Positions 3,814 through 45,847 of a stretch of 64,000 nucleotides of DNA are shown here, in pieces; position 1 is the first letter of the stretch; the number at the start of each line of letters is the position of its first letter. The DNA is from Haliotis rubra. Lineage: Eukaryota. The DNA is taken from NCBI RefSeq assembly GCF_003918875.1, contig NW_025765316.1:124001-188000 (forward strand), read 5' to 3'. A program made the translations under genes and the position numbers. Under the pieces are notes generated by a model. It was not told the origin of the DNA and ran no database searches. It saw only the letters and a program-made list of their open reading frames with translations.

Positions 3814-4964
3814 TCACTTGAAGAGTTTCTTGAAAACCTTCCCAGCGGCTGGAATGATACGTGGGAGAAGATCTCCAATGAATCCTGGCAGTGCAGATCC
3901 AAGAAGGCCCATTATTCCAGGTTTCTCCTCATTGACTTCTTTTCTCACCACCTCTCGAAAATCTGGCTTCTCTGCCTCAAGTTTCTTAATGACTTCCCCC
4001 TCTCTCTTCTTACTCTCAAACTCCATCTGTCTCTCTGATGCCTCCTTTCCTATCTTCATTTCTTTTATGGCTAATTTCAGATCTTCCATTTCCTTTGAAA
4101 GTGCAGCCATCTCACTCTCCTCTTTCTTCTCTGCTTCTTCAACTTTCTCTCTCTCTAGTGTTTTTATTCTCTCCTCCAGTTGCTTCCTCATATCCGCGTC
4201 TTCATCGTGTTTCATCTGAAGCTTCAGCTCGAACTCTCGCCTGATTTCATTTCTCTCTTCCTGGATCTTCTGTTCATGTTCCTGTGTCAACTGTTCCTCC
4301 CTCATCTTCATGTTCTTCTCTGCCTCAACATACATTTCACTTGTGTAACATTTGCCTCCGTTGTCAAGGAACACCTGGTCAACCAGTGTGATGAAGTCTT
4401 TGACATCCTGTTCCTTCTCCGCATCACAGCCTCTGTTGTTGAAGGCGATGCATCTTTTGCGGCACGACTTGACTAGGGCTTGCAGTTTTTCGGGTACTTT
4501 CTTTAAGTAATCATGTAGGGATTTATTGTCATGATTTAGATCATCTTTCCTGGTGAAGAGAACAATGAGATAGTTCAACATGTCATCTCCGAAGACCTGT
4601 CTGAAATGAGCAACCGTGTCCTGTTCCTCTTGGGTAAAGCGGTCAATCCTGACAACGAGGACAAAGGCATGAGGACCAGGAGCTGTCATGCCGACACATT
4701 TCACCACCTCCTTAGTGATTTCAGCATTTGTCATACCTGTATCGAACAACCCAGGACTGTCGATAATGTGAATATCCCGATTAAATCTGGAAGCTCTCCC
4801 TCTCTGGCACCTTTTGGTAACAGATGATCCACTGGCACTTGATTCAAAGGCTGCATTACCCAGGATGCTGCTTCCGGTTGTACTTTTTCCTGACCCAGTT
4901 CTTCCAATGAAAACTAGCCTTCTTTCAATGATGGGACAGTCAGCTGACCACTCACACCCACCTC
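3814..4964 (-). CDS. GIMAP-A: terminal exon, AIG1/GIMAP GTPase + coiled coil + C-terminal amphipathic helix
   Basis: G1 GRTGSGKS, G2 SVT, G3 DSPGLFDT, conserved box PGPHAFVLV..RFTQEE, G4 TRKDD, AFNN. Phase-1 acceptor ttgcag| at 4966-4965. Spliced model 9462-9459 + 6750-6595 + 4964-3814 = 1311 nt, 436 aa. Confidence 0.95.
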
Positions 4965-5059
4965 CTGCAATGTACATCATAATGCTATGTAATGTCTTGG
5001 ACAAGTATAAAATAATAATATATGAAACTGTATATTAACGCATCTCTTTGTGCTTCCGG

Positions 5060-5298
5060 TTGTTTGTTGTCATTTGATGTTTAACGCCGCACTCAGCAAT
5101 ATTCCAGCTATATTGCGGCTATGAGTAAATAATCCAGCTGGAGCCAGATATTCCCGTGAACAACAGCATGAACATCGATCTTCGCAAATGGGATACGATG
5201 CCATGTTTTTAACAAGTCAGTGAGCCTGACCATCCGATCCCATTAGTCGCCTCTTAGGTCAAGCATGTTGAAGACCCATTTTTACCCGGATCTTCATT
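5060..5298 (-). mobile_element. Dispersed SINE-like repeat, family B
   Basis: Reverse complement of the about 235-bp element at 27649-27885, 37540-37770 and 52030-52262, including the gctggaatattgctgagtgcggcgttaaa tail. Confidence 0.75.
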
Positions 5299-5838
5299 TC
5301 TGTAGATAATATCCTTTAATTAGGTTATGACTGGACTATAATTGATAGGGTAGGCAGGTTCAGTTATATGTTTTCCTGCTTGTCTTCGTACCCAACAGCG
5401 TGGAACGTTGGTGATGATATCGGTTGGCCTTGTTCTGGTTCTGTTACTTACAAGCCACTAGAGGGCGCGACGTAAAACCCAATACATGTAGTAAGTGGTT
5501 ACTGTCAGTAATAAGTCTATATTCACATAAACAAAGAACACAACAATTTCTGAAAATACAGACTATCACGTATTCCATGTACGTACGCCATGTGTTATGG
5601 TCACTTGAAACGAAGGAATTAACTCAGGAAGGAACATTCTTGAATTCTACTGTCTAGAATCATTATATTGTCAGAGGAATATAATTGGCACTTTGTGAAA
5701 TAGTTATGTATTGTGGTCGGCACAGGCAGTGGGCAACAGTATCGGGTATAGTGGAATATTACACGGAACAATTACACGAAGAGTTTGGCAGTTTGATTCA
5801 TGCAACACAATTACGGGCCCTAATATAATATGTAGAGA

Positions 5839-5950
5839 ATACTACACGAGGTCTCATTACATACGAATTATACGAAACAAGTGTCCTCCAGAAACCATAG
5901 CAAGGTCACGAGTTTCGTTTAATTCGTATGTAATGAGACCGAGTGTGGTA
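5839..5950. repeat. About 40-bp inverted repeat (hairpin), probably part of a non-autonomous DNA element
   Basis: atactacacgaggtctcattacatacgaattatacgaaac pairs with gtttcgtttaattcgtatgtaatgagaccgagtgtggtat across a spacer of about 33 nt. Confidence 0.7.
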
Positions 5951-6594
5951 TTTTATTTATTACCCACGTCTTACATGCAATCAATTTTCAAAATAGTGTA
6001 TTTTTGTTATTGTTATGGTTTCACACCGAAACCGGTTTCATAAAGAGGTTGCGGAAGAATTTTGTTCTGTAGTCACTTTTGCATGACGTGGCACTGTATT
6101 TTTGTCACTAAGCCATTCTCGTCTGTCCCCTTGGTAACCGACGTCACGATGCATGTCAGTTGTCATCGCCTAAACTACTCCGTAGCACCATTTACTTGGT
6201 TTGCGGTTGCTTCACTCGGCTAACATCACAGGTGGAACCATTGCGTTTATGTGTTTCGACGGATATATTGTCTCAGTTCGACTCACAATTAAACAGTGAT
6301 ACGGCAACTTTCGCAATGTTTACATACCCACAATGCATATAATTTGTAGAATGAATCCATTCACGTGTTTGTTATGAATGGACAAGTAGTTCCGTCACAA
6401 CGTGACCTAACTGAGAGGTCATCGGTTATCCAATCAAATCGTTAGAATCTCAGGTCAAGTCGTTACGACACAGGTCAACGCGATACGACACTCTTGTGAC
6501 GTACGCGGTTAGTATGCAACTACCCATACGTTGACCACGTGGGTAATACATAACCTTACGTTTTGTAGCAGCTTTGATCCGAAATGATCGTTAC

Positions 6595-6750
6595 CTCTTT
6601 GCTGGTCTGTTTGGCGGGGACCTATCGGTTCTGGATTGTCCACATTAGGTAGTCCAGGTAGTTGTCGTGGTTTAGACGTGTCACATGCATTGCAGTAGTC
6701 CAGGACGCCACTGTTGACGAATGTGCAGGTTCCACACGTCCATTCCTCAT
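6595..6750 (-). CDS. GIMAP-A exon 2: RanBP2/NZF-type zinc finger + Pro-rich linker
   Basis: 156-nt exon, aag|...G|gtaac, phase 1-1. Translates DEEWTCGTCTFVNSGVLDYCNACDTSKPRQLPG..., matching W-x-C-x2-C-x3-N-x6-C-x2-C. Not in the ORF track. Confidence 0.85.
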
Positions 6751-6825
6751 CTTCAAATAGACACGAGGGGTTTCGTCAGTTCGCAAACTAACACATTAAG
6801 TGTTAAATATAGGATATATATTATA

Positions 6826-9458: not shown

Positions 9459-9462
9459 CCAT
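9459..9462 (-). CDS. GIMAP-A start-codon micro-exon (coding ATGG; whole exon 9459-9505)
   Basis: ttatcag|...ccaccATGG|gtaagt: strong Kozak context and perfect phase-1 donor. Gives MDEEWTC. Same layout as the GIMAP-B start exon. Confidence 0.7.
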
Positions 9463-9517
9463 GGTGGAAGTATCACAGGATGTCTTGGGCCGGCAGTTCA
9501 CCAATCTGATAACAGAA

Positions 9518-10481: not shown

Positions 10482-10619
10482 NNNNNNNNNNNNNNNNNNN
10501 NNNNNNNNNNNNNNNNNNNNNNNNNNNNNNNNNNNNNNNNNNNNNNNNNNNNNNNNNNNNNNNNNNNNNNNNNNNNNNNNNNNNNNNNNNNNNNNNNNNN
10601 NNNNNNNNNNNNNNNNNNN
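10482..10619. other. Assembly gap
   Basis: Run of N. Confidence 1.
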
Positions 10620-10914
10620 CTACTACTACTACTACGACAGCTGCTACGTCTACTCATGTGCTAATGCAAATCAACCCAGGCAACGAAATGGAGGAAGTCA
10701 AATATTTACATACCTTTGTGGACCAAACTGATTATAACGAGATTACACAGCTCGGTCGGGTACAGAATAAATGAGTACATCTCCGCCTTTCGTGCAATAA
10801 AATATGGTTCAAAGTGGAAATTACGTCTGTAATCAATATCAATTTCCTTGTTCAATGACCTGAAATGACAGACAAAAACCATCACCATCCCTGGGGTCAC
10901 GGGATCACGGAATC

Positions 10915-11797
10915 ACGTGGTTACTGGGGTTACGGGGGCACAGGGGTTACGGGGCACTGTGGTTATGGGGTACCGTGGTTAAGGGGCACTGTGGTTACGG
11001 GGTACTGTGGTTACGGGGTACTGTGGTATTGGGGTACTGTGGTTACGTGGCACTGTGGTTACTGGGCACAGTGGTTACGGGGTACAGTGGTTATGGGGCA
11101 CTGTGGTTATGGGGTACTGTGGTTACGTGGCACAGGGATTACGAGGTACTGTGGTTAAGGGGTACTGTGGTTACTGGGCACTGTGGTTACGAGGTACTGT
11201 GGTTATGGGGTACTGTGGTTACGGGGCACTGTGGTTACTGGGTACTGTGGTTACGAGGCACTGTGGATACGTGGCACAGGGGTTACGGGGTACTGTGGTT
11301 ACGGGGCACAGGGGTTAGGGGCACTGTGGTTATTGGTTACTGTGGACACGGGGTACAGTGGTTATGGGGTACTGTGGTTATGGGGTACTGTGGTTATGTG
11401 GCACTGTGGTTACGGGGCACAGTGGTTACGGGGCACAGTGGTTATGGGGCACTGTGGTTACGGGGCACTGCGGTTATGGGGCACTGTGGTTATGGGGTAC
11501 TGTGGTTAAGTGGTACATGTACTGTGGTTATGTGGCACTGTGGTTACGGGGTACAGTGGTTACGGGGCACTGTGGTTACTGGGTACTGTGGTTACGAGGC
11601 ACTGTGGATACGCACTGTGGATACGTGGCACAGGGGTTACGGGGTACTGTGGTTACGGGGCACAGGGGTTACGGGGCACTGTGGTTATTGGTTACTGTGG
11701 ACACGGGGTACAGTGGTTATGGGGTACTGTGGTTACGGGGTACTGTGGTTACGGGGTACTGTGGTTACGGGGCACTGTGGTTATGGGGCACTGTGAT
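10915..11797. repeat. 16-bp minisatellite (ggggtactgtggttac)n
   Basis: Directly visible tandem array; produces spurious GYGVLWLRG ORFs in all three frames. Confidence 0.95.
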
Positions 11798-12279
11798 TAC
11801 AAGGGCCCCACTTGTAGAAGGTACCGAACATCGCCTAGTCTGTCTCGCAGTCCCCGAACCACATTATTTGCTTCCCACAAAGCCCTTGCTGTAATGCTGT
11901 AGCACTAAATAAAGCAAAAGTCGATTTCATGTAAGTTCTAAATCTCTCATCTTACATGGGTTCAGTATGAATGTTTTTCCATAAAAAACATATGTAATTA
12001 TTTGCTTTAGTCTACGGTTTGCTGAGTTTTCTGCATCACAGCGCTAAGATGGGATTCGCTTTGAGGATATTTCCTTATGTAGTAAACCCGGAGTGGAGAA
12101 CATCAGACGTTGATTATAGAATATTCGCTGAACCACGTTCTAGAAACGGTTTAGCGGCTGTCACAGCTGTTAAGACCGCCAGGCAATACTTGTAACTGAG
12201 CTTGGATGCTTGTTACTATTTTCACCAAATACAGATGCATCTGTATCGTGGATGTGAGCATCTGCTACAACCATCAATG

Positions 12280-15269: not shown

Positions 15270-18265
15270 GGGTTAATGCTGCATTATCCACATGTGACTT
15301 AATGTTATGTTATCCATCTGAGACTTAATATTGTGTTATCCTTTGTGACATAATGCTGCGTTAACCACATGCGATTTAATGCTGCGTTATCAATGTGAGA
15401 CTTCATGTTGTGTTATCCATGTGCGACGTAATGCTATGTTATCCATGTGCGACGCAATGCTATGTTATCCATGTGAGACTTAATGCTGTGTTATCCATGT
15501 GCGACGTAATGCTATGTTATCCATGTGCGACGTAATGCTATGTTATCCATGTGCGACGTAATGCTATGTTATCCATGTGCGACGTAATGCTATGTTATCC
15601 ATGTGCGACGTAATGCTGTGTTATCCATGTGCGACGTAATGCTGTTATCCACGTGAGACTTCATGTTCTGTTATCCATGCGCGACGTTATGCTATGTTAT
15701 CCATCTGTGACTTATTGGTGTGTTATCCATATGAGACTTAATGCTGTGTTATCCATGTGAGACATAATGATGTGTTATCCTTGTATGGCTTAATGATGTG
15801 TTATATATGTGAGACTTTATGCTGTGTTATCTATTTGAGACTTAATGCTGTGTTATCGATGTGAGACTTAATGCTGTGCTATCCATGTGAGACTTAATGC
15901 TGTGTTATCCTTGTATGGCTTACTGACGTGTTAGCCATGTGAAACTAAATGCTGTGTTATCCATGTGCGACTTAATCATGTGTTATTCATGTTAGACTTA
16001 TTGGTGTGTTATCCATTTGAGACTTAATGCTGTGTTATCCATGTGTGACTTAATGCTGTTATCCATGTGTGACTTACTGCTGTGTTATCCATCTGTGACT
16101 TATTGGTGTGTTATCCATGTGAGACTTAATGCTGTGTTATCCATGTGTGACGTATTGCTGTGTTATCCTTGTATGACTTAATGATGTGTTATATATGTGA
16201 GACTTTATCCTGTGTTATCTATTTGAGACTTAATGCTGTGTTATCGATGTGAGACTTAATGCTGTTATCCATGTGAGACTTAATGCTGTGTTATCCTTGT
16301 ATGGCTTAATGATGTGTTAGCCATCTGAAACTTAATGCTGTGTTATCCATGTGCGACTTCATCATGTGTTATCCATGTTAGACTTATTGGTGTGTTATCC
16401 ATTTGAGACTTAATGCTGTGTTATCCATGTGTGACTTAATGCTGTTATCCATGTGTGACTTAATGCTGTGTTATCCATCTGTGACTTATTGGTGTGTTAT
16501 CCATGTGAGACTTAATGCTGTGTTATCCATGTGTGACGTATTGCTGTGTTATCCTTGTATGACTTAATGATGTGTTATATATGTGAGACTTTATCCTGTG
16601 TTATCTATTTGAGACTTAATGCTGTGTTATCGATGTGAGACTTAATGCTGTTATCCATGTGAGACTTAATGCTGTGTTATCCTTGTATGGCTTAATGATG
16701 TGTTAGCCATCTGAAACTTAATGCTGTGTTATCCATGTGCGACTTAATCATGTGTTATCCATGTTAGACTTATTGGTGTGTTATCCATCTGAGACTTCAT
16801 GCTATGTTATCCATGTGTGACGTAATGCTACGTTATCCATGTGTGACTTAATGTTGTTATCCATGTGTGACTTAATGCTGTGTTATCTATAGGTGACTTA
16901 TTGGTGTGTTATCCATCTGAGACTTAATGCTGTGTTATCCATGTGTGACGTATTGCTGTGTTATCCTTGTATGACTTAATGATGTGTTATATATGTGAGA
17001 CTTTATCCTGTGTTATCTATTTGAGACTTAATACTATGTTATCAATGTGAGACTTAATGCTGTTATCCATGTGAGACTTAATGCTATGTTATCAATGTGT
17101 GACTTAATGCTGTTATCCATGTGTGACATAATGATGTGTTGTCTTTCTGTGACTTATTGGTGTGTTATACATATGAGACTTAATGCTGCCTCATCCATGT
17201 GAGACTTAATGCTGTGCTATCCATGTGAGACTTAATGATGTGTTATCCTTGTATGGCTTAATGATGTGTTAGCCATGTGAAACTTAATGCTGTGTTATCC
17301 ATGTGCGACTTAATCATGTGTTATCCATGTTTGACTTAATACTGTTATCCATGTGCGACGTAATGCTATGTTATCCATGTGTGACTTAATACTCTTATCC
17401 ATGTGTGACTTAATGCTATGTTATCCATGTGTGACTTAATGCTGTTATCCATGTGTGACTTAATGATGTGTTATCTATTTGAGACTTAATGCTGTGTTAT
17501 CCATGTGGGACTTCATGCTGTGCTATCAATTTGAGGCTTAATGCTGTGTTATCCATGTGCGGCGTAATGCTATGTTATCCATGTGTGACTTAATACTGTT
17601 ATCCATGTGCGACGTAATGCTATGTTTTCCATGTGTGACTTAATACTGTTATCCATGTGAGACTTAATGCTGTGTTATCCATCTGAGACTTAATGCTGTG
17701 TTATCCATGTGGGACTTAATGCTGTGTTGTCTATGTGTGACATAATCCTGTGTTGTCCTTAATTCTGTGTAATATATAAGTGCCTTAATGCTGTTTCATC
17801 CATTTGAGATTGATTGCTGTGTTATCCATGTGCGACGTAATGCTATATTATCCATGTGTGACTTAATGCCGTGGTATCCATGTGTGACTTAATGCTGTGT
17901 TATCCATCTGAGATTTAATGCTGGGTAATCCATCTGAGACTAAATGCTGTTATCCATCTGAGACTTAATGCTGTGTTATCCTGTGTCACGTAATGCTGTG
18001 CTTACCATGTGAGACCTAATGCTGTGTTATCTGTGTGTTACATGATGCTTGTTATCCACCTGAGAGTTAATGCTGTGTTAACCATTTGCGACGTAATGCT
18101 ATGTTATCCATGTGTGATTTAATGCTATGTTATCCGTGTGCGACGTAATGATATGTTATCCATGTGTGACCTAATGCTGTGTTTTAATCATGTGTGACTT
18201 AATGCTGTGATATCAAACAGTTAATAAATGCTGTTTTTCCGTTTGAGACTTAATACTCTTTTATC
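15270..18265. repeat. 26-bp satellite (gacttaatgctgtgttatccatgtga)n with higher-order structure
   Basis: About 3-kb tandem array; diagnostic variant monomers recur at 15817, 16205, 16591 and 17003. Confidence 0.95.
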
Positions 18266-19543: not shown

Positions 19544-20679
19544 TTACTTAGAGAACAACCCTCTAAAAAACTTTCCAATTTTGGGCAGAACACTCCCAAC
19601 GAGGGTTGGCAGGATGTTTCCAAGTATGCCCATTATACCTGGTTTCTCGTCATTGACTTCCTTTCGAGCGGTTTCTCTGAAGTTTGGCTTTTCTATTCCC
19701 AGTCTTTTCCTCACCTCCTTGTCTTTCTTCTTTCGTTCCATGTCCAGCTTGTTCTCTGATTCCTCCTTCTGTTTCTTAATGTCTCTCAAGGTCAGCTTCA
19801 GATTCATAACTTCTTTTTGGAGAGCAGCCATGTCTTTGTCGGTTTCGGCGTTATTTTCCTTTTCAATTTCAAGTTGTCGTATTCGGTCCTCCAGCTGTTT
19901 TCTGACTTCTGATGTTTCATCATGCTTCATCTGCAGTTTCAACTCAAATTCTCTCCAGATTGCGTCCCTCTCTTCTTGCCCCTTCCGTTCATGTTCCAGC
20001 CTCAGCTGCTCCTCTCTCATCGTCATGTTGCTCTCAGCCTCCTCAAACATTGCACTCGTATAGCACATACCTCCGTTGTCATCAACCATTTCGTCCACCA
20101 ATGTGAGGAAGGCCTCGACATCTTGTTCCTTCTCCTCATCACTTCCTCTGTTGTTGAAGGCAACGCATCTGTCATTGCACGACTTCACAAAGTCTCGCAG
20201 TGGCTGGGGGACTTTCTTTAAATACCCCTTGATGCTTTGCTTTTCATGCAAAAGATCGTCCTTTCTAGTGAACAGAATGATGATATAGTCCAACATATCT
20301 TCTCCAAACACAAGCCTAAAATGGTTCAGCGTGTCTTGTTCCTCTTGGGTAAAGCGGTCAATCCTCACAACGAAGACAAAGGCATGAGGACCTGGAGCTG
20401 TCATCCCGACACATTTCACCACCTCCTTGGTGATTTCAGCATTCGTCATACCTGTGTCGAACAATCCAGGACTGTCGATTATTTGGATATCCCGGCCAAA
20501 TCGATTGCTGGTTCCTCTCTGGCACCTTTTGGTAATAGATGATCCACATGCGCTTGATTCAAACACTTCTTTGCCAAGGATGTTATTGCCTGTAGCACTC
20601 TTCCCTGACCCTGTTCTACCAAGGAAAACTATTCTCCTTTCGGTTGGACCGAGGTCATTTAACGACCCAGTATCTGTCC
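19544..20679 (-). CDS. GIMAP-B: terminal exon, AIG1/GIMAP GTPase + coiled coil + C-terminal amphipathic helix
   Basis: Frame stays open upstream of the listed ORF through RRIVFLGRTGSGKSATGNNILG to a phase-1 acceptor tttcag| at 20681-20680. Close paralog of GIMAP-A. Model 21729-21726 + 21040-20936 + 20679-19544 = 1245 nt, 414 aa. Confidence 0.95.
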
Positions 20680-20935: not shown

Positions 20936-21040
20936 CTGTCTTGCACCGACTTGGTCCCGGCATCGGCGCTGAACAGGCTTTGCATTTTTCCTTGCTGCCA
21001 TCGTTTTCAAGAGTACACTTGCCGCATATCCATTCCCCAT
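20936..21040 (-). CDS. GIMAP-B exon 2: RanBP2/NZF-type zinc finger
   Basis: 105-nt phase 1-1 exon, ttgtcag|...G|gtaac: DGEWICGKCTLENDGSKEKCKACSAPMPGPSRCKT. Confidence 0.85.
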
Positions 21041-21725: not shown

Positions 21726-21729
21726 CCAT
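21726..21729 (-). CDS. GIMAP-B start-codon micro-exon (coding ATGG; whole exon 21726-21763)
   Basis: tttcag|...caacATGG|gtaggt; gives MDGEWIC. Confidence 0.7.
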
Positions 21730-27340: not shown

Positions 27341-27487
27341 NNNNNNNNNNNNNNNNNNNNNNNNNNNNNNNNNNNNNNNNNNNNNNNNNNNNNNNNNNNN
27401 NNNNNNNNNNNNNNNNNNNNNNNNNNNNNNNNNNNNNNNNNNNNNNNNNNNNNNNNNNNNNNNNNNNNNNNNNNNNNNNNNNNNNNN
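27341..27487. other. Assembly gap
   Basis: Run of N. Confidence 1.
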
Positions 27488-30094: not shown

Positions 30095-31179
30095 TCAGAA
30101 GAATGGCAAAAAGCGACGAATAGCAAGATTTACAGCAACCTTTACAACTAGCTTCAATCCGTTTTTCAGCAGGTTATATGTGAAAGAGTCTCCCTTGTCT
30201 ACCTCATCGACAGTCCTGTCCCTGAAGTCAATCATGGCCATCTCTTCATCAATAGCTCGTTCGCGCTCCAACATTTCTTCGTCAATCTCCCATGTATTCC
30301 TGTCTCTCATTTGCTTGAGATCTTCAATCTCCTGTTTCAACGATGCAATTCCCGATACATCGACATTGTCATTAGCTGTACCCTGTTCTAGAACCTGTAG
30401 TTTCTGCTGAAGTCCGCTGATGGTTTTGCTCGTCCTTGCTTCAGCTTGTTGGTGCCTCCACTCACATTCTTCTCTGATCGCATCCTTCTGTAACTGCACT
30501 TCCTTTGCATGCTGTAGTTGCAACTGTTTCTCTCGTGTCTTCATTATCTTCTCAGCCTCCTGGTACATCTCGTTGGTGTAACAACCCCCTCCGTTAGCAC
30601 ACAGCATTGTGTCGACTATGCGAAGAAATGTTTTTACATCTTGTTCCCGCTCATCCTCAGAACTTGTCCGGTTGTCGAAAGCCACGTATCTGTTTTCACA
30701 GTTTGCAAGGAGGGTCTTAAGGTTGTCGGGGACACCTTCTAGAAACAGTTCGATTGTGCTTTTGTCATTAATCAAGTCATCTTTCCTTGTAAACAAGACC
30801 ACCAGGTAGTGAATCATATTCTCCCCAAATATTTCCAAAAAAGAGCGAACAGTTTTTTGCTCTTCTTCTGTGAACCTGTCAATCCGTACGACAAGAACGA
30901 GTGCATGAGGACCTGGAGCAGTCATTCCAACACACCTGACAACTTCTCTGGTGATGTCTTCATCAGTCATTTCAGTGTCAAACATACCAGGTGTGTCTAT
31001 TATAGTAATGCGACGCCCAAATCTGCTGGCCTGACCTCTCTGGCACCGACGAGTTACCGACTTGCCGCTTGCAGTTGAATGGAAGAAATTGCCGTTGAGG
31101 ATGTTGTTGCCTGTGGCACTTTTACCCGATCCAGTTCTCCCCAGAAAAACGAGTCTGAGATCATCTGTACATCTGTAGC
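30095..31179 (-). CDS. GIMAP-C: terminal exon, AIG1/GIMAP GTPase + coiled coil + C-terminal amphipathic helix
   Basis: GRTGSGKS, DTPGMFDT, PGPHAL, RFTEEE, TRKDD. Phase-1 acceptor ttatag| at 31181-31180; the hydrophobic start of the listed ORF is intronic. Five-exon model = 1635 nt, 544 aa. Confidence 0.95.
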
Positions 31180-31570
31180 CTATAACACAAAAAACTGCAT
31201 ATAGATAATGCCACACACACACACACAGATATATATATATTATATATAGTAACATTAAAAGCAATATACATATATATAAGAATAACTGCCGCCAAAGTTA
31301 CTTGGGACAGATGCAAATATAAGGTTATCACTATAAAGGGTATCACTGTCAACATTTGTGTGTAGAAATAGCTTAGAGACAGGTTTAAAAGGCGATCATA
31401 GTTTGGAGACAGACAAAATTGAAGTATTGAAATTGCAAAATTTGTGTGGAGAACTTCTTGTTGGTAGTGGTTATTCCTTTACCCGCTGAAATAGTCCACA
31501 GTGTAGCTTGTTGCAAGACATTGCTACGGGAAGTTCAACTTCTATCGCTAGATACGAATACCATGCTCAC

Positions 31571-31762
31571 CTTTGTCATTTGCCTTGCTCCGGGAGACAT
31601 CACGTTTATCGTACATATCGGAAAATGGCCTGCGTGGACGTGTTTCTAAGGAGTCGTTGCCAGTGGATACAACCAAATGGTTCACTTCCCTTGTTAAATC
31701 ACACAGTCCACAGTTGACAGATCCCGCTCTGTTTCTGTAAGTGCAGTGTGAACATGTCCAAT
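31571..31762 (-). CDS. GIMAP-C NZF exon 3 (RanBP2-type zinc finger + linker)
   Basis: 192-nt phase 1-1 exon, ctctgcag|...AAG|gtgag: DWTCSHCTYRNRAGSVNCGLCDLTR... Not in the ORF track. Confidence 0.85.
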
Positions 31763-31939
31763 CTGCAGAGAAACCAGGAACATGTATGGTTGAGGAAAAG
31801 ATACGGATTTTGACTTTGACTATTCAAGAATGCCTGAAAGTACCCTTGTACTTCGGTGATATAAGATTATAAGATTTTTTATTTTGCACTATTAATTTTC
31901 AGCTTGAAAAAGATATGACGAAAATGTAAAATAAGAAAA

Positions 31940-34900
31940 CTACCTCCCATACCATAATCCTCATCATGTATTATATATACATACCAGAACCCTCATCATG
32001 TATTATACATACCATAACCCCCATAATGTATTATACATACCATAACCCTCATCATGGTATTATACAGACCATAACCTCATCATGTATTAAACATACCATA
32101 ACCCTCATCATGGTATTATACATACCATAACATTCATCATGTATTATACATACCATAACCCTCATAATGAATCATACATACCATAACCCTTATTATGGTA
32201 TTATACGTACCATAACCCTCACCATGTATTATACATACCATAACCCTCATCATGTATTATACATACCATAGCCCTTCATCATGGTATTATACATACCATA
32301 GGTCTCATTATGGTATTATATATACCATAACCCTCATCATGTATTATACATACCATAACCCTCATCCTGGCATAATACATACCATAACCCTCATCATGGT
32401 ATCATACATACCATAACCCATTTCAAGTATTATACATACCATAACCCTCATCATGTATTATACATACCATAACCCTTCATCATGGTATTATACATACCAT
32501 AACCCTCATCATGTATTATACATACCAGAACCCTCATCATGTATTATACATACTATAACCCTCATCATGGTATTATACATACCATAGCCCTTCATCATGG
32601 TATTATACATACCATAACCCTTATCATGTATTATACATATCAGAACCCTCATCATGTATTATACATACCATAGCTCTTCATCATCGTATTATACATACCA
32701 TAACCCTCATCATGTATTATACATACCATAACCCTCATTATGGTATTATACACACCATAACCTTCATCATGGTATTATACACACCATAACCCTCATTATG
32801 GTATTATACACACCATAACCATAATCATGTATTATACACACCATAACCATAATTATGTATTATACATACCATAACCCTCATCATGTATTATACATACCAT
32901 AACCCGCATTATGGTATTATACATACCATAACCCTCATTATGGTATTATACATACCATAACCCTCATTATGGTATTATACTCACCATAACCATAATCATG
33001 TATTATACACACCATAACCATAATCATGTATTATACATACCATAACCCTCATTATGGTATTATACCTACCATAACCCTCATCATGTATTATACATACCAT
33101 AACCCTCATCATGTATTATACATACCATAACCCTAATCATGTATTATACATACCAGAACCCTCATCATGTATTATACATACCATAACCCTCATCATGTAT
33201 TATACATACCATAACCCTCATCATGTATTATACATACCATAACCCTCATCATGTATTATACATACCATAACCCTCATCATGTATTATACATACCATAACC
33301 TTCATCATGTATTATACATACCATAACCCTCATCATGTATTATACATACCATAACCCTCATTATGGTATTATACACACCATAACCTTCATCATGGTATTA
33401 TATACCATAACCCTCATTATGGTATTATACACACCATAACCATAATCATGTATTATACACACCATAACCATAATCATGTATTATACATACCATAACCCTC
33501 ATCATGTATTATACATACCATAACCCGCATTATGGTATTATACATACCATAACCCTCATTATGGTATTATACATACCATAACCCTCATTATGGTATTATA
33601 CACACCATAACCATAATCATGTATTATACACACCATAACCATAATCATGTATTATACATACCATAACCCTCATTATGGTATTATACCTACCATAACCCTC
33701 ATCATGTATTATACATACCATAACCCTCATCATGGTATTATACATACCATAACCCTAATCATGTATTATACATACCAGAACCCTCATCATGTATTATACA
33801 TACTATAACCCTCATCATGGTATTATACAAACCCTAGCCCTTCATCATGGTATTATACATACCATAACCCTTATCATGTATTATACATATCAGAACCCTC
33901 ATCATGTATTATACATACCATAGCTCTTCATCATCGTATTATACATACCATAACCCTCATCATGTATTATACATACCATAACCCGCATTATGGTATTATA
34001 CATACCATAACCCTCATTATGGTATTATACATACCATAACCCTCATTATGGTATTATACACACCATAACCATAATCATGTATTATACACACCATAACCAT
34101 AATCATGTATTATACATACCATAACCCTCATTATGGTATTATACCTACCATAACCCTCATCATGTATTATACATACCATAACCCTCATCATGGTATTATA
34201 CACACCAGAACCTTCATGATGGTATTATACAAACCATAACCCTCATTATGGTATTATACATACCATAACCTTCATCATGGTATTATACACACCATAACCC
34301 TCATCATGTATTATACACACCATAACCCAATTCATGTATTATACATACCATAACCCTTCATCGTGGTATTATAAACACCATAACCATAATCATGTGTTAT
34401 ACACACCATAACCATAATCATGTATTATACATACCATAACCCTTATCATGTTTTATACATACAATATCCCTCATCATGGTAATATACATACCATGACCCT
34501 CATTATGGTATTATACATACCATATTATACATACCATAGCCCTTATCATGTATTATACATAGTTACCATAATCCTCATCATGTACTATACATACCATAAT
34601 CCTCATCATGTATTATACATACCATAATCCTCATCATGTAGTATACATAGTTACCATATCCCTTATCATGTATTATACTTACCATAATCCTCATCATGTA
34701 TTATACTTACCATAATCCTCATCATGTATTATACATACCATAATCCTCATCATGTATTATACATAGTTACCATAATCCTCATCATGTATTATACATACCA
34801 TAATCCCCATCATGTATTATACATATCCTTCCCATATCCCTTATCATGTATTATACTTACCATAATCCTCATCATGTATTATACTTACCATAATCCTCAT

Positions 34901-35770
34901 CATGTATTATACATACCATAATCCTCATCATGTATTATACATAGTTACCATAACCCTCATCATGTATTATACATACCATAATCCCCATCATGTATTATAC
35001 ATAGTTACCATAACCCTCATTATGGTATTATACATACTATAACCCTCATCATGTATTATACATACCATAATCCTCATCATGGTATTATACATACAATAAA
35101 CCTCATCGTGGTATTATACATACCATAACCTTCATCATGCATTATACATACCATTACCCTCATCATGGTATTATACATACCATAACTCTCATCATGGTAT
35201 CATGTTAAAACGATCCCAGGTACTGTGTATTGCTGAATTAAAAACATAATCCTCATCATGTATTATACTTACCATAATCCTCATCATGTATTATACATAG
35301 TTGCCATAATCCTCATCATGTATTATACATACCATAATCCCCATCATGTATTATACATAGTTACCATATCCCTTATCATGTATTATACTTACCATAATCC
35401 TCATCATGTATTATACTTACCATAATCCTCATCATGTATTATACATACCATAATCCTCATCATGTATTATACATAGTTACCATAACCCTCATCATGTATT
35501 ATACATACCATAATCCCCATCATGTATTATACATACAATAAACCTCATCGTGGTATTATACATACCATAACCCTCATCATGTATTATACATACCATAATC
35601 CTCATCATGGTATTATACATACAATAAACCTCATCGTGGTATTATACATACCATAACCTTCATCATGCATTATACATACCATTACCCTCATCATGGTATT
35701 ATACATACCATAACTCTCATCATGGTATCATGTTAAAACGATCCCAGGTACTGTGTATTGCTGAATTAAA
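31940..35770. repeat. 28/29-bp satellite (cataccataaccctcatcat[g]gtattata)n, intronic
   Basis: About 3.8-kb tandem array; its unique right-hand junction sequence occurs twice (about 35194-35243 and 35722-35770). Confidence 0.95.
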
Positions 35771-35990: not shown

Positions 35991-36065
35991 CTGTTATGTG
36001 CTGGCCGTATGCATCGCACACATCACTGTGAACATTGATACAGGTACAGCTCGTGCACTGCCACT
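35991..36065 (-). CDS. GIMAP-C NZF exon 2 (degenerate RanBP2-type finger)
   Basis: 75-nt phase 1-1 exon, tttttcag|...CAG|gtaat: EWQCTSCTCINVHSDVCDAYGQHIT. The fourth Cys is Tyr (TAC) and the loop is one residue short. Confidence 0.7.
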
Positions 36066-36249: not shown

Positions 36250-36400
36250 NNNNNNNNNNNNNNNNNNNNNNNNNNNNNNNNNNNNNNNNNNNNNNNNNNN
36301 NNNNNNNNNNNNNNNNNNNNNNNNNNNNNNNNNNNNNNNNNNNNNNNNNNNNNNNNNNNNNNNNNNNNNNNNNNNNNNNNNNNNNNNNNNNNNNNNNNNN
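36250..36400. other. Assembly gap
   Basis: Run of N. Confidence 1.
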
Positions 36401-38689: not shown

Positions 38690-41600
38690 CACAACACATA
38701 GTACGTTACTCTCTAACTTTACACATAGTAACATTAACATAGTACGCTACTCTCTAACGGTACACATAGTAACATTAACATAGTACGCTACTCTCTAACG
38801 GTACACATAGTAACATTAACATAGTACGTTACTCTCTAACGGTACACATAGTAACATTCACATAGTACGTTACTCTCTAACGGTACACATAGTAACATTA
38901 ACATAGTACGCTACTCTCTAACGGTACACATAGTAACATTAACATAGTACGCTAGTCTCTAACGTTACACACAGTAACATTAACATAGTACGTTACTCTC
39001 TAACGGTACGCATAGTAACATTAACATAGTACGCTACTCTCTAACGTTACACACAGTAACATTCTCATAGTACGTTACTCTCTAACGTTACACACAGTAA
39101 CATTAACATAGTACGTTACACTCAAACATTGCACATAGTAACATTAACATAGTACGTTACTCTCTAACGGTACACATAGTAATATTAACATAGTACGTTA
39201 CTCTCTAACAGTACACATAGTAACATTCACATAGTACGTTACTCTCTAACGGTACACATAGTAACATTAACATAGTACGTTACTCTCTAACGTTACACAT
39301 AGTAACATTAACATAGTACGCTACTCTCTAACGTTACACACAGTAACATTAACATAGTACGTTACTCTCTAACGGTACACATAGTAACATTAACATAGTA
39401 CGTTACTCTCTAACGGTACACATAGTAACATTCACATAGTACGCTACTCTCTAATGGTACACATAGTAACATTCACATAGTACGTTACTCTCTAACGGTA
39501 CACATAGTAACATTAACATAGTACGTTACACTCAAACATTGCAGATAGTAACATTAACATAGTACGCTACTCTCTAACGGTACACATAGTAACATTAACA
39601 TAGTACGTTACTCTCTAACGGTACACATAGTAACATTAACATAGTACGTTACACTCAAACATTGCACATAGTAACATTAACATAGTACGCTACTCTCTAA
39701 CGGTACACATAGTAACATTAACATAGTACGTTACTCTTTAACGGTACACATAGTAACATTAACATAGTACGTTACTCTCTAACGGTACACATAGTAACAT
39801 TCACATAGTACGTTACTCTCTAACGGTACACATAGTAACATTAACATAGTACGCTACTCTCTAACGGTACACATAGTAACATTAACATAGTACGCTAGTC
39901 TCTAACGTTACACACAGTAACATTCACATAGTACGTTACTCTCTAACGGTACGCATAGTAACATTAACATAGTACGCTACTCTCTAACGTTACACACAGT
40001 AACATTCTCATAGTACGTTATTCTCTAACGTTACACACAGTAACATTAACATAGTACGTTACACTCAAACGTTCCACATAGTAACATTAACATAGTACGT
40101 TACTGTCTAACGGTACACATAGTAACATTAACATAGTACGTTACTCTCTAACGTTACACACAGTAACATTAACATAGTACGTTACTCTCTAACGGTACAC
40201 ATAGTAACATTAACATAGTACGTTACTCTCTAACTTTACACACAGTAACATTCACATAGTACGCTACTCTCTAACGGTACACATAGTAACATTAACATAG
40301 TACGTTACTCTCTAACGGTACACATAGAAACATTCACATAGTACGCTACTCTCTAACGGTACACACAGTAACATTAACATAGTACGCTACTCTCTAACGG
40401 TACACATAGTAACATTAACATAGTACGTTACTCTCTAACGGTACACATAGTAACATTAACATAGTACGTTACTCTAACGTTACACACAGTAACATTAACA
40501 TAGTACGCTACTCTCTAACGGTACACACAGTAACATTAACATAGTACGCTACTCTCTAACGTTACACACAGTAACATTAACATAGTACGCTACTCTCTAA
40601 CGGTACACATAGTAACATTCACATAGTACGCTACTCGCAAACATTGCACATAGTAACATTCACATAGTACGCTACTCTCTAACGTTACATATAGTAACAT
40701 TCACATAGTACGCTACTCGCAAACATTGCACATAGTAACATTAACATAGTACGTTACTCTCTAACGTTACACACAGTAACATTAACATAGTACGCTACTC
40801 TCTAACGGTACACATAGTAACATTAACATAGTACGCTACTCTCTAACGTTACACACAGTAACATTAACATAGTACGCTACTCTCTAACGGTACACATAGT
40901 AACATTCGCATAGTACGCTACTCGCAAACATTGCACATAGTAACATTCACATAGTACGCTACTCTCTAACGGTACACATAGTAACATTCACATAGTACGC
41001 TACTCGCAAACATTGCACATAGTAACATTCACATAGTACGCTACTCTCTAACGTTACACATAGTAACATTCACATAGTACGTTACTCTCTAACGTTACAC
41101 ATAGTAACATTCACATAGAAGGTTACTCTCTAACGTTGCACATAGTGACATTCACATAGTACGCTACTCGCAAACATTGCACATAGTAACATCCACATAG
41201 TACGTTACTCTCTAACGTTACACATAGAAGCATTCACATAGTACGTTACTCTCTAACGTTACACATAGTAACATTCACATAGTACGTTACTCTCTAACGT
41301 TGCACATAGTGACATTAACATAGTACGCTACTCGCAAACATTGCACATAGTAACATCCACATAGTACGTTACTCTCTAACGTTACACATAGTAACATTCA
41401 CATAGTACGCTACTCTCTAACGTTGCACATAGTGACATTAACATTGTACGCTACTCGCAAACATTGCACATAGTAACATCCACATAGTACGTTACTCTCT
41501 AACGTTACACATAGGAACATTCACATAGTACGCTACTCTCTAACGTAACACATAGTAACATTCAAACAGTACGTTACTCTCTAACGTTACACAAAGTAAC

Positions 41601-41690
41601 ATTCACATAGCACGCTACTCTCTAACGTTACACATAGTAACATTAACATAGTACGCTACTCTCTAACGTAACACAAAGTAACATTCACAA
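38690..41690. repeat. 41-bp satellite (acatagtaacattaacatagtacgttactctctaacggtac)n
   Basis: About 3-kb homogeneous tandem array. Confidence 0.95.
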
Positions 41691-42510
41691 CTATCACTAC
41701 ACAGTAACACTTTCACTGGACCTGTTGTAACTCTTACTACACAGTAACACTTTCACTGAACCTGTAGTAACTCTTACTACACAGTAACACTTTCATTGGA
41801 CCTGTAGTAACTCTTACTGCACAGTAACATTTTCACTGGACCTGTAGTAACTCTTACTACACAGTAACACTTTCACTGAACCTGTAGTAACTCTTACTAC
41901 ACAGTAACACTTTCACTGAACCTGTAGCCACACTCATTACATAGTAACACTTTCACAGAAACTGTAGTAACTCTTACTACACAGTAACACTTTCACCGAA
42001 CCTTTAGTGACTCTCACTACATAGTCAGTAATACTCTCACGGAACCTGTAGTAACTCTCACTACATAGTAACACTTTCACTGAATCTGTAGTAACTCTCA
42101 CTACACAGTAACACTTTCACTGAACCTGTAGTAACTCTTACTGCACAGTAACACTTTCACTGAACCTGTAGTAACACTGACTACACAGTAACACTTTCAC
42201 AGAACCTTTAGTAACACTGACTACACAGTAACAGTTTCACAGAACCTTTAGTAACACTGACTACACAGTAACACTTTCACCGAACCTTTAGTAACACTGA
42301 CTACACAGTAACACTTTCACCGAACCTTTTCGTAACACTCACTACACAGTAACACTTTCACCGAACCTTTAGTAACACTCACTACACAGTAACACTTTCA
42401 CAGAACCTTTAGTAACACTGACTACGCAGTAACACTTCCCCTGAACCTGTAGTAACACTGGCTTCACAGTAACACTTTCACCGAACCTTTAGTGACACTC
42501 ACTACACAAG
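41691..42510. repeat. 40-bp satellite (tacacagtaacactttcactgaacctgtagtaactcttac)n
   Basis: About 20 copies directly abutting the 41-bp array. Confidence 0.95.
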
Positions 42511-44646: not shown

Positions 44647-44860
44647 TATGAATTAGCAATGTATACAGCCTAAGAGATTATGGTAAAAACGAGGATTCAG
44701 GAATCTTTATAATATTAATATGAATTAGCAATGTATACAGCCTAAGAGATTATGGTAAAAACGAGGATTCAGAAATCTTTATAATATTAATATGAATTAG
44801 CAATGTATACAGCCTAAGAGATTATGGTATAAACGAGGATTCAGATATCTCTATAATATA
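44647..44860. repeat. 72-bp tandem repeat, 3 copies
   Basis: tatgaattagcaatgtatacagcctaagag... starts at 44647, 44719 and 44791. Confidence 0.9.
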
Positions 44861-45128
44861 TGCTATGAGCAATTCTGAGGTTGTATGATCTTTGACCCAA
44901 CAGAACAATGTGTGTGTGTGCGTGTGTGCGTGTGCGCGCGTAAGTATGTACAGATTGTGTCCACGGTTCGGCCTGCCATGATCCTTTGATCAGGGGTTCG
45001 ACTCCTTGAATTATCCTGATTATTGTCTTGGTTTATCTACACCACACTAACGCTACTTCTTCACCAAAGTGGGAAACACATCGATTCATACCCCACGTAA
45101 CATAATGAATGTCAGTAAATGTACTTAC

Positions 45129-45338
45129 CACCATGTTCTACGTGCCTCGGTGTAGGGATATCCGTTTTTGAATCCACTTGCCGATCACGCATTTGTAGCT
45201 GTGTACTGTCACAGTCTTGTTGCGTTTGGTCATCTTGAACAGCTTGAAGTGAATCGTCCAGTATCCTCTGGTATTCACACATCTGACAAACTTGGATGGA
45301 CTCGGCGTTAATAAACGTGCACCTTGAGCATGACCATC
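45129..45338 (-). CDS. GIMAP-C NZF exon 1 (canonical TF/M NZF + Gln/Asp-rich linker)
   Basis: 210-nt phase 1-1 exon, tttctag|...G|gtaagt: GWSCSRCTFINAESIQVCQMCEYQR... Assignment to GIMAP-C rests on strand, phase and position. Confidence 0.8.
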
Positions 45339-45774
45339 CTAGAAATACATGTGTCACGTACCATTATATTGATATATTTGAAGCATTTATACCTCGGCAT
45401 ATATCGAACACTCACTGTATCAACGCTAATCAAAGTTCCTAAAACTACACTGAATAAACTTCGACTTCGAGAACTAGACAAGAGTTTGGTATGAAATATG
45501 TTCCATTTAATCATAGAAGACGCGGTGTGAATGTTCACTAATAAGTTTTTTGAAGCAGGTAAATCTATGCTTTCTTGAACCAACGCATATGGTGTACATT
45601 AACACAACAAAAAGCTCATCAACGGGGATATGTTTACGCCGCTGCAAAGGGTAAACGGACATTTATTTAAACTGAATTCAAGTATTTTACATGTAAGGTA
45701 AAATATTATCATGTCATGTGACTCAACTATAGAAATGTATAAAATCGAAACAATACGAGAAATAGAAAACGTAC

Positions 45775-45847
45775 CTATTTGAGCGTTTTCCAGAGATGTT
45801 CCTGATATTGCTGTATCTTGTGGTAACTGTCTCGAGTTCGAGCCCAT
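45775..45847 (-). CDS. GIMAP-C probable first coding exon (exon 45775-45878)
   Basis: ttgttcag|...actATGG... encodes MGSNSRQLPQDTAISGTSLENAQI, then G|gtacg phase-1 donor. Confidence 0.55.

What the first reader, a model, noticed from the sequence alone, without database searches (positions are those of the whole stretch)
3814..45847. GIMAPs carrying N-terminal NZF (RanBP2-type) zinc fingers: candidate ubiquitin-sensing immune GTPases
Seen: five small exons encode W-x-C-x2-C-T-[FLYC]-x-N...C-x2-C fingers (6595-6750, 20936-21040, 31571-31762, 35991-36065, 45129-45338). All are on the GIMAP strand, all have lengths divisible by 3, and all splice in frame to GIMAP-A, -B or -C. Known: NZF fingers with the T-F/Y...hydrophobic signature (Npl4, SHARPIN, HOIL-1L, TAB2, TRABID) bind ubiquitin, and vertebrate GIMAPs have no such domain. 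Inference: these GTPases may be recruited to ubiquitin-coated pathogens or damaged vacuoles, combining sensor (NZF), oligomerising GTPase and membrane-binding tail in one chain. This would be analogous to GBP/IRG cell-autonomous defence.
Basis: partly seen in the sequence, partly recalled or inferred. Interest (0 to 1): 0.85.

Follow-up and report, generated by a model that had tools for sequence, protein, structure and literature searches.

The report
Abalone GIMAP GTPases with NZF fingers
Three neighbouring immune-type GTPase (GIMAP) genes of the blacklip abalone really do carry small N-terminal zinc fingers of the ubiquitin-binding (NZF) class, a mollusc-wide gene design that sits unremarked in public protein sets and suggests, but does not prove, that these GTPases are steered by ubiquitin tags.

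Summary
The window is a Haliotis rubra scaffold with five tandem GIMAP (AIG1) genes. Three of them (A, B, C, minus strand) are preceded by 1, 1 and 3 small exons that each encode a RanBP2/NZF zinc finger. All five exons have AG/GT borders, lengths divisible by 3, and phase 1 at both ends, matching a phase-1 acceptor on each GTPase exon. RefSeq models XP_046559390 (A), XP_046559374-76 (B) and XP_046559371-73 (C) use exactly these exons. RNA-like contigs from two samples of one study remove the 391-base intron between finger 3 and the GIMAP-C exon, and a contig end also links finger 2 to finger 3. Two assembly gaps are intergenic and the third lies in an intron of C. A profile of 31 mollusc GIMAP fingers matches ubiquitin-binding NZFs best (Npl4, HOIP, HOIL-1L, TRABID, TAB2/3). 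It scores lower on Ran-binding and RNA-binding fingers. The T-hydrophobic...hydrophobic signature is kept. I found the same design in 34 proteins of abalones, mussels, scallops, oysters and a pearl oyster, in no chordate hit, and in no paper searched. Ubiquitin binding, membrane binding and an immune role remain inferences. The window's copy of finger 2 of C has lost a zinc ligand. Verdict: a real, already auto-annotated but undescribed variant of GIMAP. The scan noted GIMAP-C separately as well.

The parts
3814..4964 (-). GIMAP-A large exon: AIG1 GTPase, long helical region, basic amphipathic tail, stop codon
   Evidence: AIG1 at 228.6 bits. Phase-1 acceptor TTGCAG at 4964. P0001 residues 54-436 map at 100%. 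The fold matches human GIMAP7 and GIMAP2.
6595..6750 (-). GIMAP-A finger exon (WTCGTCTFVN...CNAC) plus a Pro-rich linker
   Evidence: Zn_ribbon_RanBP at 30.0 bits, above the cut-off of 27. AG/GT borders. P0001 residues 2-54 map at 100%. Model pLDDT is 80-90 for the finger and below 50 for linker residues 32-64.
9459..9462 (-). GIMAP-A first coding exon end: ACCATGG followed by donor GTAAGT; it supplies Met and one base
   Evidence: Start of the called gene in L001 mapped back to window 9462.
19544..20679 (-). GIMAP-B large exon (AIG1, helices, tail, stop)
   Evidence: AIG1 at 178.4 bits on the part listed as an ORF. The open frame extends to 20701, with a phase-1 acceptor TTTCAG at 20679 and an intact P-loop. 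P0009 maps at 99.5%.
20936..21040 (-). GIMAP-B finger exon (WICGKCTLEN...CKAC)
   Evidence: Zn_ribbon_RanBP at 28.4 bits. AG/GT borders. P0009 residues 2-37 map at 100%.
21726..21729 (-). GIMAP-B first coding exon end: AACATGG followed by donor GTAGGT
   Evidence: The called gene range of 2186 bases puts the ATG at 21729. The sequence was read.
30095..31179 (-). GIMAP-C large exon (AIG1, helices, tail, stop)
   Evidence: AIG1 at 232.6 bits. Acceptor at 31179. Contigs of X1 and X2 join 31178/31179 to 31570/31571.
31571..31762 (-). GIMAP-C finger 3 exon (WTCSHCTYRN...CGLC) plus linker
   Evidence: Zn_ribbon_RanBP at 20.8 bits. It is joined to the GTPase exon in RNA-like contigs of two samples, while the DNA runs keep the intron.
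35991..36065 (-). GIMAP-C finger 2 exon. In this assembly it is degenerate (WQCTSCTCIN...CDAY), with the fourth zinc ligand read as Tyr
   Evidence: 10.1 bits. The loose end of an X1 contig at 31765 matches 35994 onward and reads CDAC. The H. asinina orthologue has TF...CDAC.
36250..36400 (.). Assembly gap inside the intron between fingers 2 and 1 of GIMAP-C
   Evidence: It does not touch coding sequence. Continuity was not tested directly.
45129..45338 (-). GIMAP-C finger 1 exon (WSCSRCTFIN...CQMC, the full TF...M signature) plus linker
   Evidence: Zn_ribbon_RanBP at 14.6 bits. All PDB matches up to E = 0.02 are ubiquitin-binding NZFs, led by TAB3 and TAB2. P0034 residues 101-171 map at 98.6%.
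45775..45847 (-). GIMAP-C exon with the probable initiator ATG (MGSNSRQ...), ending in phase 1 at donor GTACGT
   Evidence: The H. asinina orthologue starts at the equivalent Met. RefSeq isoform X2 adds upstream exons at 46823-46936 and 47322-47408.
31948..35724 (.). 28-base satellite (about 131 copies) filling the intron between fingers 3 and 2
38696..42508 (.). 41-base and 40-base satellites in the intron between fingers 2 and 1

Best explanation
Shown: GIMAP-A, -B and -C of Haliotis rubra are multi-exon genes. A tiny first coding exon (ATG plus one base in A and B) is followed by one to three symmetric phase-1 exons, each encoding one RanBP2-fold zinc finger plus a linker. These are spliced to a single large exon that encodes an AIG1/GIMAP GTPase, about 120 residues of long helices and a short basic amphipathic tail. 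By sequence the fingers belong to the NZF subclass. Inferred: the fingers bind ubiquitin (mono-ubiquitin or chains) through the T-F/Y...hydrophobic surface. Because they hang on a disordered linker of about 35 residues, they would concentrate the GTPase on ubiquitinated surfaces or complexes. There, nucleotide-dependent GIMAP self-association and the amphipathic tail would act. Gene C, with up to three fingers (two of them only about six residues apart), would gain avidity or chain-type preference. My odds: architecture and splicing about 0.95; at least some fingers bind ubiquitin about 0.55; the target being ubiquitin-coated pathogens or damaged vacuoles about 0.25.
For: RefSeq models are identical to the exon sets. 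RNA-like contigs of X1 and X2 skip exactly 31179-31570 with GT..AG ends on the minus strand and have zero depth in that intron, while runs X5 and X6 cover it. A contig end links finger 2 to finger 3. Across 31 mollusc GIMAP fingers W, the four Cys and Asn are invariant, Thr or Ser sits before a hydrophobic residue (F/Y/L/V/I) in all, and the residue before the last Cys is M/A/V/I/L in 30 of 31. The best single-domain PDB scores of that profile are Npl4 44.0, HOIP 37.2, HOIL-1L 36.6, YAF2 35.6, TRABID 32.7 and TAB2 28.8 bits. Single RanBP2 fingers score at most 18.3, Nup153 at most 28.9, ZRANB2 24.7 and RBM5 17.4. C finger 1 matches only ubiquitin-binding NZFs up to E = 0.02. The finger exons have evolved under constraint: dN/dS is 0.31-0.39 against 0.21-0.22 for the GTPase exons in three comparisons. 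In the AlphaFold2 model the finger is confident (pLDDT 80-90), the linker is disordered, and the G domain superposes on human GIMAP7, 2, 5, 1 and 4 with target TM 0.8-0.9. The design is kept in 34 proteins across abalones and four orders of bivalves.
Against: No binding, localisation or expression-upon-challenge data exist for these genes. A (TF...A) and B (TL...A) lack the large hydrophobic residue at the third signature position. Paralogues and orthologues of A vary F/L/V at the second position, and by my recollection of the Npl4 literature a change toward L-V abolishes binding. Nup153 fingers score close to TAB2 against the profile. The finger 2 copy of C in the window lacks a zinc ligand. 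Three of the five fingers are below Pfam's cut-off. The tails are not transmembrane (maximum 19-residue hydropathy about 1.5) and are modelled with pLDDT below 50. The RNA nature of X1 and X2 is the tool's guess, both come from one study, and junctions of A and B rest on gene models only.
Confidence: 0.55

Rival explanations
1. The fingers do bind ubiquitin chains, but the proteins act in signalling or cell-death control, not as sensors of ubiquitin-coated pathogens. They would read K63 or M1 chains made by the expanded mollusc IAP/TRAF ligases, as TAB2/3 do.
For: The closest single matches of A and of C finger 1 are TAB3 and TAB2 NZFs. Oyster fingers carry the TAB2-like C-T-[FY]-L-N core. In oysters a GIMAP4-like transcript rises together with BIRC and TRAF transcripts after herpesvirus challenge (PMC8917759). 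By established knowledge, vertebrate GIMAPs are tied to lymphocyte survival and autophagy rather than to vacuole attack.
Against: No evidence on chain type or partners. The second ubiquitin-contact face of TAB2 was not examined. The amphipathic tail suggests a membrane or organelle site.
Confidence: 0.25
2. The fingers are RanBP2-fold modules with a ligand other than ubiquitin (Ran-GDP, RNA, another protein or a ubiquitin-like modifier), or they act within the molecule to regulate the GTPase.
For: The Pfam family covers all these uses. A and B lack the full TF...M signature. Nup153 fingers reach 25.8-28.9 bits against the profile, and ZRANB2 appears among the hits of finger A.
Against: RanBP2 and Nup153 fingers show L-V, L-L or C-V where these have T-F/Y/L (alignments). 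None of the five window fingers has the N-[FW]-x-x-R core that I recall for ZRANB2-type RNA binders (sequences). The near-invariant Thr is not needed for the fold. Ubiquitin-binding NZFs take the top single-domain scores.
Confidence: 0.17
3. Gene-model artefact: the finger exons belong to other transcripts, or are decaying relics not translated with the GTPase.
For: RefSeq models are predictions. Finger 2 of C is broken in this assembly. Several close paralogues or isoforms lack a finger.
Against: RNA-like contigs join finger 3 to the GTPase exon and finger 2 to finger 3. Phase matching is perfect in all five exons. dN/dS is below 0.4. The same exon design occurs in H. asinina and H. cracherodii loci and across bivalves.
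Confidence: 0.03

Closest known systems
Vertebrate GIMAP/IAN GTPases (human GIMAP7, GIMAP2, GIMAP5, GIMAP1, GIMAP4)
   Same: AIG1 G domain with an intact P-loop, DxPG and TRKD motifs; 31-38% identity and target TM 0.8-0.9 to the solved structures. Helical C-terminal extension and tandem gene clusters.
   Different: No vertebrate hit carries a RanBP2/NZF finger. The tail here is a basic amphipathic helix, not the transmembrane anchor that I recall for GIMAP1, 2 and 5. The helical region is much longer (residues 263-384 in the model).
Ubiquitin-binding NZF fingers of Npl4, HOIP, HOIL-1L, SHARPIN, TAB2/3 and TRABID
   Same: Same spacing of W, four Cys and Asn. T-F/Y after the first knuckle and a hydrophobic residue before the last Cys. 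These (SHARPIN was not among the listed hits) are the best single-domain PDB matches.
   Different: Here the finger is fused to a GTPase, not to a ligase, deubiquitinase, kinase adaptor or segregase cofactor. Several copies have Ala or Leu at signature positions. Binding is untested.
Biomphalaria glabrata AIG/GIMAP family with accessory domains (PMC7053062)
   Same: A mollusc AIG1 expansion in tandem arrays, with coiled coils and varied N-terminal add-on domains (death domain, CARD, ARM, kinase, hint).
   Different: That survey lists no zinc finger among its 19 architectures. The NZF fusion seen in abalones and bivalves is not described there.
GBP/IRG cell-autonomous immunity working with ubiquitin coats
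   Same: Functional analogy only: immune GTPases acting at ubiquitin-marked membranes (established knowledge).
   Different: A different GTPase superfamily. GBPs and IRGs have no built-in ubiquitin reader. No evidence here for vacuole targeting.

Membership tests
GIMAP / AIG1 GTPase (PF04548) | Match to the AIG1 profile above the curated cut-off | tested here: met
   228.6, 178.4 and 232.6 bits against a cut-off of 27 for A, B and C.
GIMAP / AIG1 GTPase (PF04548) | Intact nucleotide-binding motifs (G1 GxxxxGKS, G3 DxPG, G4 [TN][KR]xD) | tested here: met
   GRTGSGKS, D[ST]PG and TRKD read in all three genes. They are invariant columns in the 44-protein alignment.
GIMAP / AIG1 GTPase (PF04548) | GIMAP fold with a helical C-terminal extension | tested here: met
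   The AlphaFold2 model (pLDDT 83) matches GIMAP7, 2, 5, 1 and 4 at E 1e-13 to 1e-22 with target TM 0.8-0.9. Long helices span residues 263-384.
GIMAP / AIG1 GTPase (PF04548) | GTP binding or hydrolysis, and nucleotide-dependent oligomerisation | not testable with these tools
   Needs biochemistry.
RanBP2-type zinc finger (PF00641) | W-x-C-x2-C-x3-N-x(5-6)-C-x2-C with four zinc ligands | tested here: met
   Met in 4 of the 5 window fingers. Finger 2 of C has Tyr for the fourth Cys in this assembly but Cys in an RNA-like contig and in H. asinina.
RanBP2-type zinc finger (PF00641) | Score above Pfam's gathering cut-off (27 bits) | tested here: inconclusive
   A scores 30.0 and B 28.4, both above. 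C fingers score 20.8, 14.6 and 10.1, all below. The C fingers are nevertheless recognised by the family-specific profile and by PDB NZF matches.
Ubiquitin-binding NZF subclass | T-F (or T-Y) after the first knuckle plus a hydrophobic residue before the last Cys (the T13-F14/M25 signature of Npl4; feature definition from established knowledge) | tested here: inconclusive
   C finger 1 (TF...M) and C finger 3 (TY...L) meet it. A (TF...A) is partial, B (TL...A) is weak, and C finger 2 (TC, ligand lost) does not meet it in the window.
Ubiquitin-binding NZF subclass | Closer in sequence to proven ubiquitin-binding NZFs than to Ran-binding or RNA-binding fingers | tested here: met
   Single-domain scores against the profile: Npl4 44.0, HOIP 37.2, HOIL-1L 36.6 and TRABID 32.7 bits. 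RanBP2 fingers score at most 18.3, ZRANB2 24.7 and RBM5 17.4. Nup153 (up to 28.9) overlaps TAB2 (28.8).
Ubiquitin-binding NZF subclass | Direct binding to ubiquitin | not testable with these tools
   The structure tool folds single chains only, so no complex prediction or assay was possible.
Ran-binding fingers of Nup153/RanBP2 | L-V (or similar) in place of T-F after the first knuckle | tested here: not met
   Alignments show CLVQN, CLVRN and CLLQN in RanBP2 and Nup153. The window fingers have CTFVN, CTLEN, CTYRN, CTCIN and CTFIN.
RNA-binding fingers of the ZRANB2/RBM5/FUS type | N-[FW]-x-x-R core that stacks on GGU RNA (from established knowledge) | tested here: not met
   After the invariant Asn the five fingers read SGVLD, DGSKE, RAGSV, VHSDV and AESIQ, with no aromatic-x-x-Arg. 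Profile scores are 24.7 for ZRANB2 and 17.4 for RBM5.

The most novel reading that the evidence does not exclude
NZF-GIMAPs would be an old family, predating the gastropod-bivalve split, of single-chain, ubiquitin-directed cell-autonomous defence GTPases. The finger reads ubiquitin coats on pathogens or damaged vacuoles, and the GTPase, coiled coil and amphipathic tail assemble on that membrane. This would be a one-protein counterpart of the vertebrate GBP/IRG-plus-ubiquitin system, diversified by shuffling of phase-1 finger exons. The Schlafen-GIMAP fusion in the same cluster would be another product of that shuffling.
Probability: 0.2. Interest if true: 0.8.

Novelty: new variant of a known kind. 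Interest (0 to 1): 0.55.

Why it matters
How GIMAP GTPases choose their sites of action is still unclear, even in mammals. A GIMAP with a built-in reader domain gives a concrete hypothesis that can be tested directly: ubiquitin-directed recruitment. It can be tested with small recombinant fingers and T-F mutants, in animals (abalone, oysters, mussels, scallops) where GIMAP expansions are repeatedly linked to disease resistance. The locus also shows how symmetric phase-1 exons let one GTPase chassis acquire one, two or three sensor modules, and a Schlafen module in the neighbouring gene. That bears on how invertebrate immune repertoires diversify. If the fingers do not bind ubiquitin, this remains an ordinary lineage-specific domain fusion.

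Tried and rejected
The shorter stretch 29800-33100 was laid instead.

2. A region-limited protein search (P0001 residues 1-110), meant to rank GIMAPs by finger plus P-loop, scored only 224 candidates and found 6 Haliotis proteins. It says nothing about taxonomic breadth.

3. Searching the 31-column finger profile against 1.84 billion representatives returned 8256 hits. The best 150 are multi-finger proteins. Apart from P0027, which is itself a GIMAP, none of the other 149 matches an AIG1 profile, so this gave no fusion outside molluscs and no source for the finger.

4. Exact look-ups of P0034 and P0027 found no record. dN/dS for the three C fingers between species therefore could not be computed.

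5. Eight literature searches or reads found no description of a zinc finger on a GIMAP. This is not proof of absence, since subscription papers are not covered.

6. I rejected a transmembrane anchor: no segment outside the G-domain core exceeds about 1.5 mean hydropathy over 19 residues.

7. I rejected chance ORFs: the long plus-strand ORFs at 10865-11900 and 22246-23471 are translations of minisatellites.
Full report
**What the window is.** A search with the GIMAP-A exon returned a 100% identical 436-residue RefSeq protein of Haliotis rubra on a 201,173-base scaffold. Exact look-ups give XP_046559390.1 for A, XP_046559374-76 for B and XP_046559371-73 (LOC124268454, isoforms X1-X3) for C. Mapping of these and related proteins shows five AIG1 genes in the window:
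- A: 3817-4964, minus strand.
- B: 19547-20679, minus strand.
- C: 30098-31179, minus strand.
- D: 47873-49096, plus strand, with no finger.
- E: about 52900-54026, minus strand.

**The observation.**
They have AG before and GT after, and lengths of 156, 105, 192, 75 and 210.
- The full two-knuckle motif occurs four times in all six frames of the window, against 0.01 expected from shuffles.
- The fifth exon (35991-36065) has only the first knuckle in this assembly.
- Pfam places A and B above the RanBP-finger cut-off (30.0 and 28.4 bits against 27). The three C fingers fall below it (20.8, 10.1 and 14.6 bits).
- The three large exons are strong AIG1 matches.
- Each large exon has a good acceptor that leaves two bases before the first full codon (4964, 20679, 31179). 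That is what exons starting and ending in phase 1 need.
- The RefSeq proteins read straight through these joints.
- In A and B the first coding exon supplies only ATG plus one base: ACCATGG|GTAAGT at 9462-9459 and AACATGG|GTAGGT at 21729-21726.
- The likely start of C is the ATG at 45847, in an exon that ends in phase 1 at 45775.

**Gaps.**
- The CDS of A ends at 9462 and that of B at 21729, and C ends at 30095. Gaps 10482-10619 and 27341-27487 therefore lie between coding regions.
- Gap 36250-36400 lies in the 9-kb intron between fingers 2 and 1 of C. It cannot affect a frame.
- Whether the scaffold is correctly joined there was not tested directly. The H. asinina orthologue, from a 66-Mb chromosome-scale sequence, has the same three fingers in the same order (P0027).

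**Transcript evidence.** On 29800-33100 the results were as follows:
- Two runs that the tool guesses to be RNA (X1 and X2: two samples, one study) have zero depth across 31243-31464.
- Each of these runs contains a contig that joins 31178 to 31570, skipping 391 bases with CT..AC ends on the plus strand. That is GT..AG on the gene's strand.
- Two other runs (X5 and X6) cover the intron continuously, as DNA would.
- A further X1 contig runs off the upper end of the finger-3 exon into letters that match 35994 onward, the 3' end of the finger-2 exon. The three shared letters explain the reported position.
- Two of C's finger junctions are thus seen in assembled transcripts.
- The contigs differ from the window by about 2%, so they come from another individual or a very close relative.
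- They read Cys (CDAC) where the window reads Tyr (CDAY). The defect in finger 2 is therefore an allele, a species difference or an assembly error, not a fixed loss.
- Junctions of A and B rest on the RefSeq models, on identical exon designs in H. asinina and H. cracherodii loci, and on constraint: dN/dS is 0.31, 0.39 and 0.33 for finger exons against 0.21, 0.22 and 0.21 for the GTPase exons. Counts are small and no significance test was run.

**What kind of finger.**
- I aligned 31 fingers from mollusc GIMAPs. W, both Cys pairs and Asn are invariant.
- The residue after the first knuckle is Thr in 28 and Ser in 3. The next residue is always hydrophobic (F, Y, L, V or I).
- The residue before the last Cys is M, A, V, I or L in 30 of 31.
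- These are the positions of the Npl4 T13-F14/M25 ubiquitin contact (established knowledge).
- Used as a profile against all PDB sequences, the best single-domain scores are Npl4 (44.0), HOIP (37.2), HOIL-1L (36.6), YAF2 (35.6), TRABID (32.7), RYBP (29.7) and TAB2 (28.8).
- Single RanBP2 fingers reach at most 18.3 bits, Nup153 25.8-28.9, ZRANB2 24.7, and RBM5 and RBM10 about 17.
- The printed alignments show L-V or L-L in the nucleoporin fingers where these have T-F.
- Finger 1 of C matches only ubiquitin-binding NZFs down to E = 0.02.
- Finger A is closest to TAB3 and TAB2 as a single domain, but with less separation.
- By signature: C finger 1 (TF...M) and C finger 3 (TY...L) are canonical, A (TF...A) is partial, B (TL...A) is weak, and C finger 2 is defective here.

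**The rest of the protein.**
- An AlphaFold2 model of A built on 44 homologues has mean pLDDT 83.
- The finger is confident (pLDDT 80-90) and residues 32-64 are disordered (pLDDT 30-41).
- The G domain is followed by two very long helices (263-329 and 336-384) and a low-confidence helical tail.
- Foldseek puts the G domain on human GIMAP7, 2, 5, 1 and 4.
- The tails of A, B and C are basic (net +3 to +5 over the last 15 residues) and amphipathic. They are not hydrophobic enough for a membrane span. 'Membrane-binding tail' is therefore a reasonable guess, not a finding.

**Distribution.** A motif scan of the listed homologues found fingers ahead of the P-loop in 34 proteins:
- Abalones: five Haliotis species.
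- Mussels: Mytilus edulis and M. galloprovincialis.
- Scallops: Mizuhopecten, Ylistrum and Argopecten, each with a two-finger protein. Pecten maximus and a second Mizuhopecten protein carry a degenerate variant.
- Oysters: Ostrea edulis, Saccostrea cucullata, S. echinata and Crassostrea virginica.
- Pearl oyster: Pinctada imbricata.
- Three unnamed transcriptome-derived proteins.

Other distribution results:
- None of the fish, amphibian, reptile, bird, mammal or hemichordate hits has a finger.
- The only ESM Atlas cluster combining both Pfam families is molluscan.
- On a tree of the G domain alone, finger-bearing genes occur in both the bivalve and the abalone branches and are clustered: 8 changes against 13.2 in shuffles, with at least 4 forced by well-supported branches.
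- This fits an old fusion with losses, incomplete models, or repeated exon shuffling. The tree cannot tell which.
- The Biomphalaria AIG survey lists death, CARD, ARM, kinase and hint domains but no zinc finger.
- No paper in the searchable library links GIMAP or AIG1 with NZF or RanBP2 fingers.

**Mechanism and rivals.**
- The best-supported reading is a ubiquitin reader tethered by a floppy linker to a GIMAP GTPase.
- What it reads (pathogen coats, damaged membranes or signalling chains) is open.
- A non-ubiquitin ligand cannot be excluded for A and B.
- A gene-model artefact is very unlikely.

**Novelty.** The architecture is already in RefSeq and UniRef with both Pfam hits, so it is not new to databases. 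As a described biological entity I found nothing. It is a new variant of a known kind (GIMAP), not a new kind of system.

**Context from the scan.** My mapping confirms an AIG1 exon there, but I did not examine the Schlafen part. Together with the one-to-three finger exons, it suggests that this cluster swaps N-terminal modules onto a common GTPase exon. Note s1-322362 covers GIMAP-C itself. Its three fingers and satellite-filled introns are confirmed.

Noticed in passing
window 35991-36065: Finger 2 of GIMAP-C reads TC...CDAY in the assembly, so the fourth zinc ligand is lost. An RNA-like contig of run X1 reads CDAC and the H. asinina orthologue reads TF...CDAC. This is an allele, a species difference or an assembly error.
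   Followed up: partly
window 47873-49096 (+): GIMAP-D (P0024, 408 aa) is a single-exon, finger-less GIMAP with a Lys-rich tail in place of the amphipathic one. It lies head-to-head with the upstream exons of GIMAP-C isoform X2 (46823-46936, 47322-47408), about 460 bases away, which suggests a possible shared promoter region.
   Followed up: no
window 52900-54026 (-): A fifth AIG1 exon (37-46% identical to the other GIMAPs mapped). No finger motif lies upstream of it in the window.
   Followed up: partly
L001 21480-23887 (about 2 kb beyond the low end of the window): The tandem array continues. The next gene on the scaffold encodes another one-finger NZF-GIMAP (P0003, 442 aa), and P0004 lies on the same scaffold.
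   Followed up: partly
window 31948-35724, 38696-42508, 15273-18214, 22213-23353, 10923-11800: Large minisatellite arrays with periods of 28, 41/40, 26, 48 and 16 bases fill the introns of C and the spacers between genes. Two of them (10923-11800 and 22213-23353) produce the long spurious ORFs seen in the ORF list, and the 22213-23353 array does so on both strands.
   Followed up: partly
P0351 and P0369 (scallop GIMAPs): Some scallop paralogues keep the four Cys and the Trp but have lost Thr and Asn (CEYLC, CGFRS). These may be decaying or repurposed fingers.
   Followed up: no
L003 1-5526 (H. asinina): One called gene model there spans 944 residues with two finger-AIG1 units in a row. It is probably a read-through merge of two tandem NZF-GIMAP genes.
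   Followed up: no
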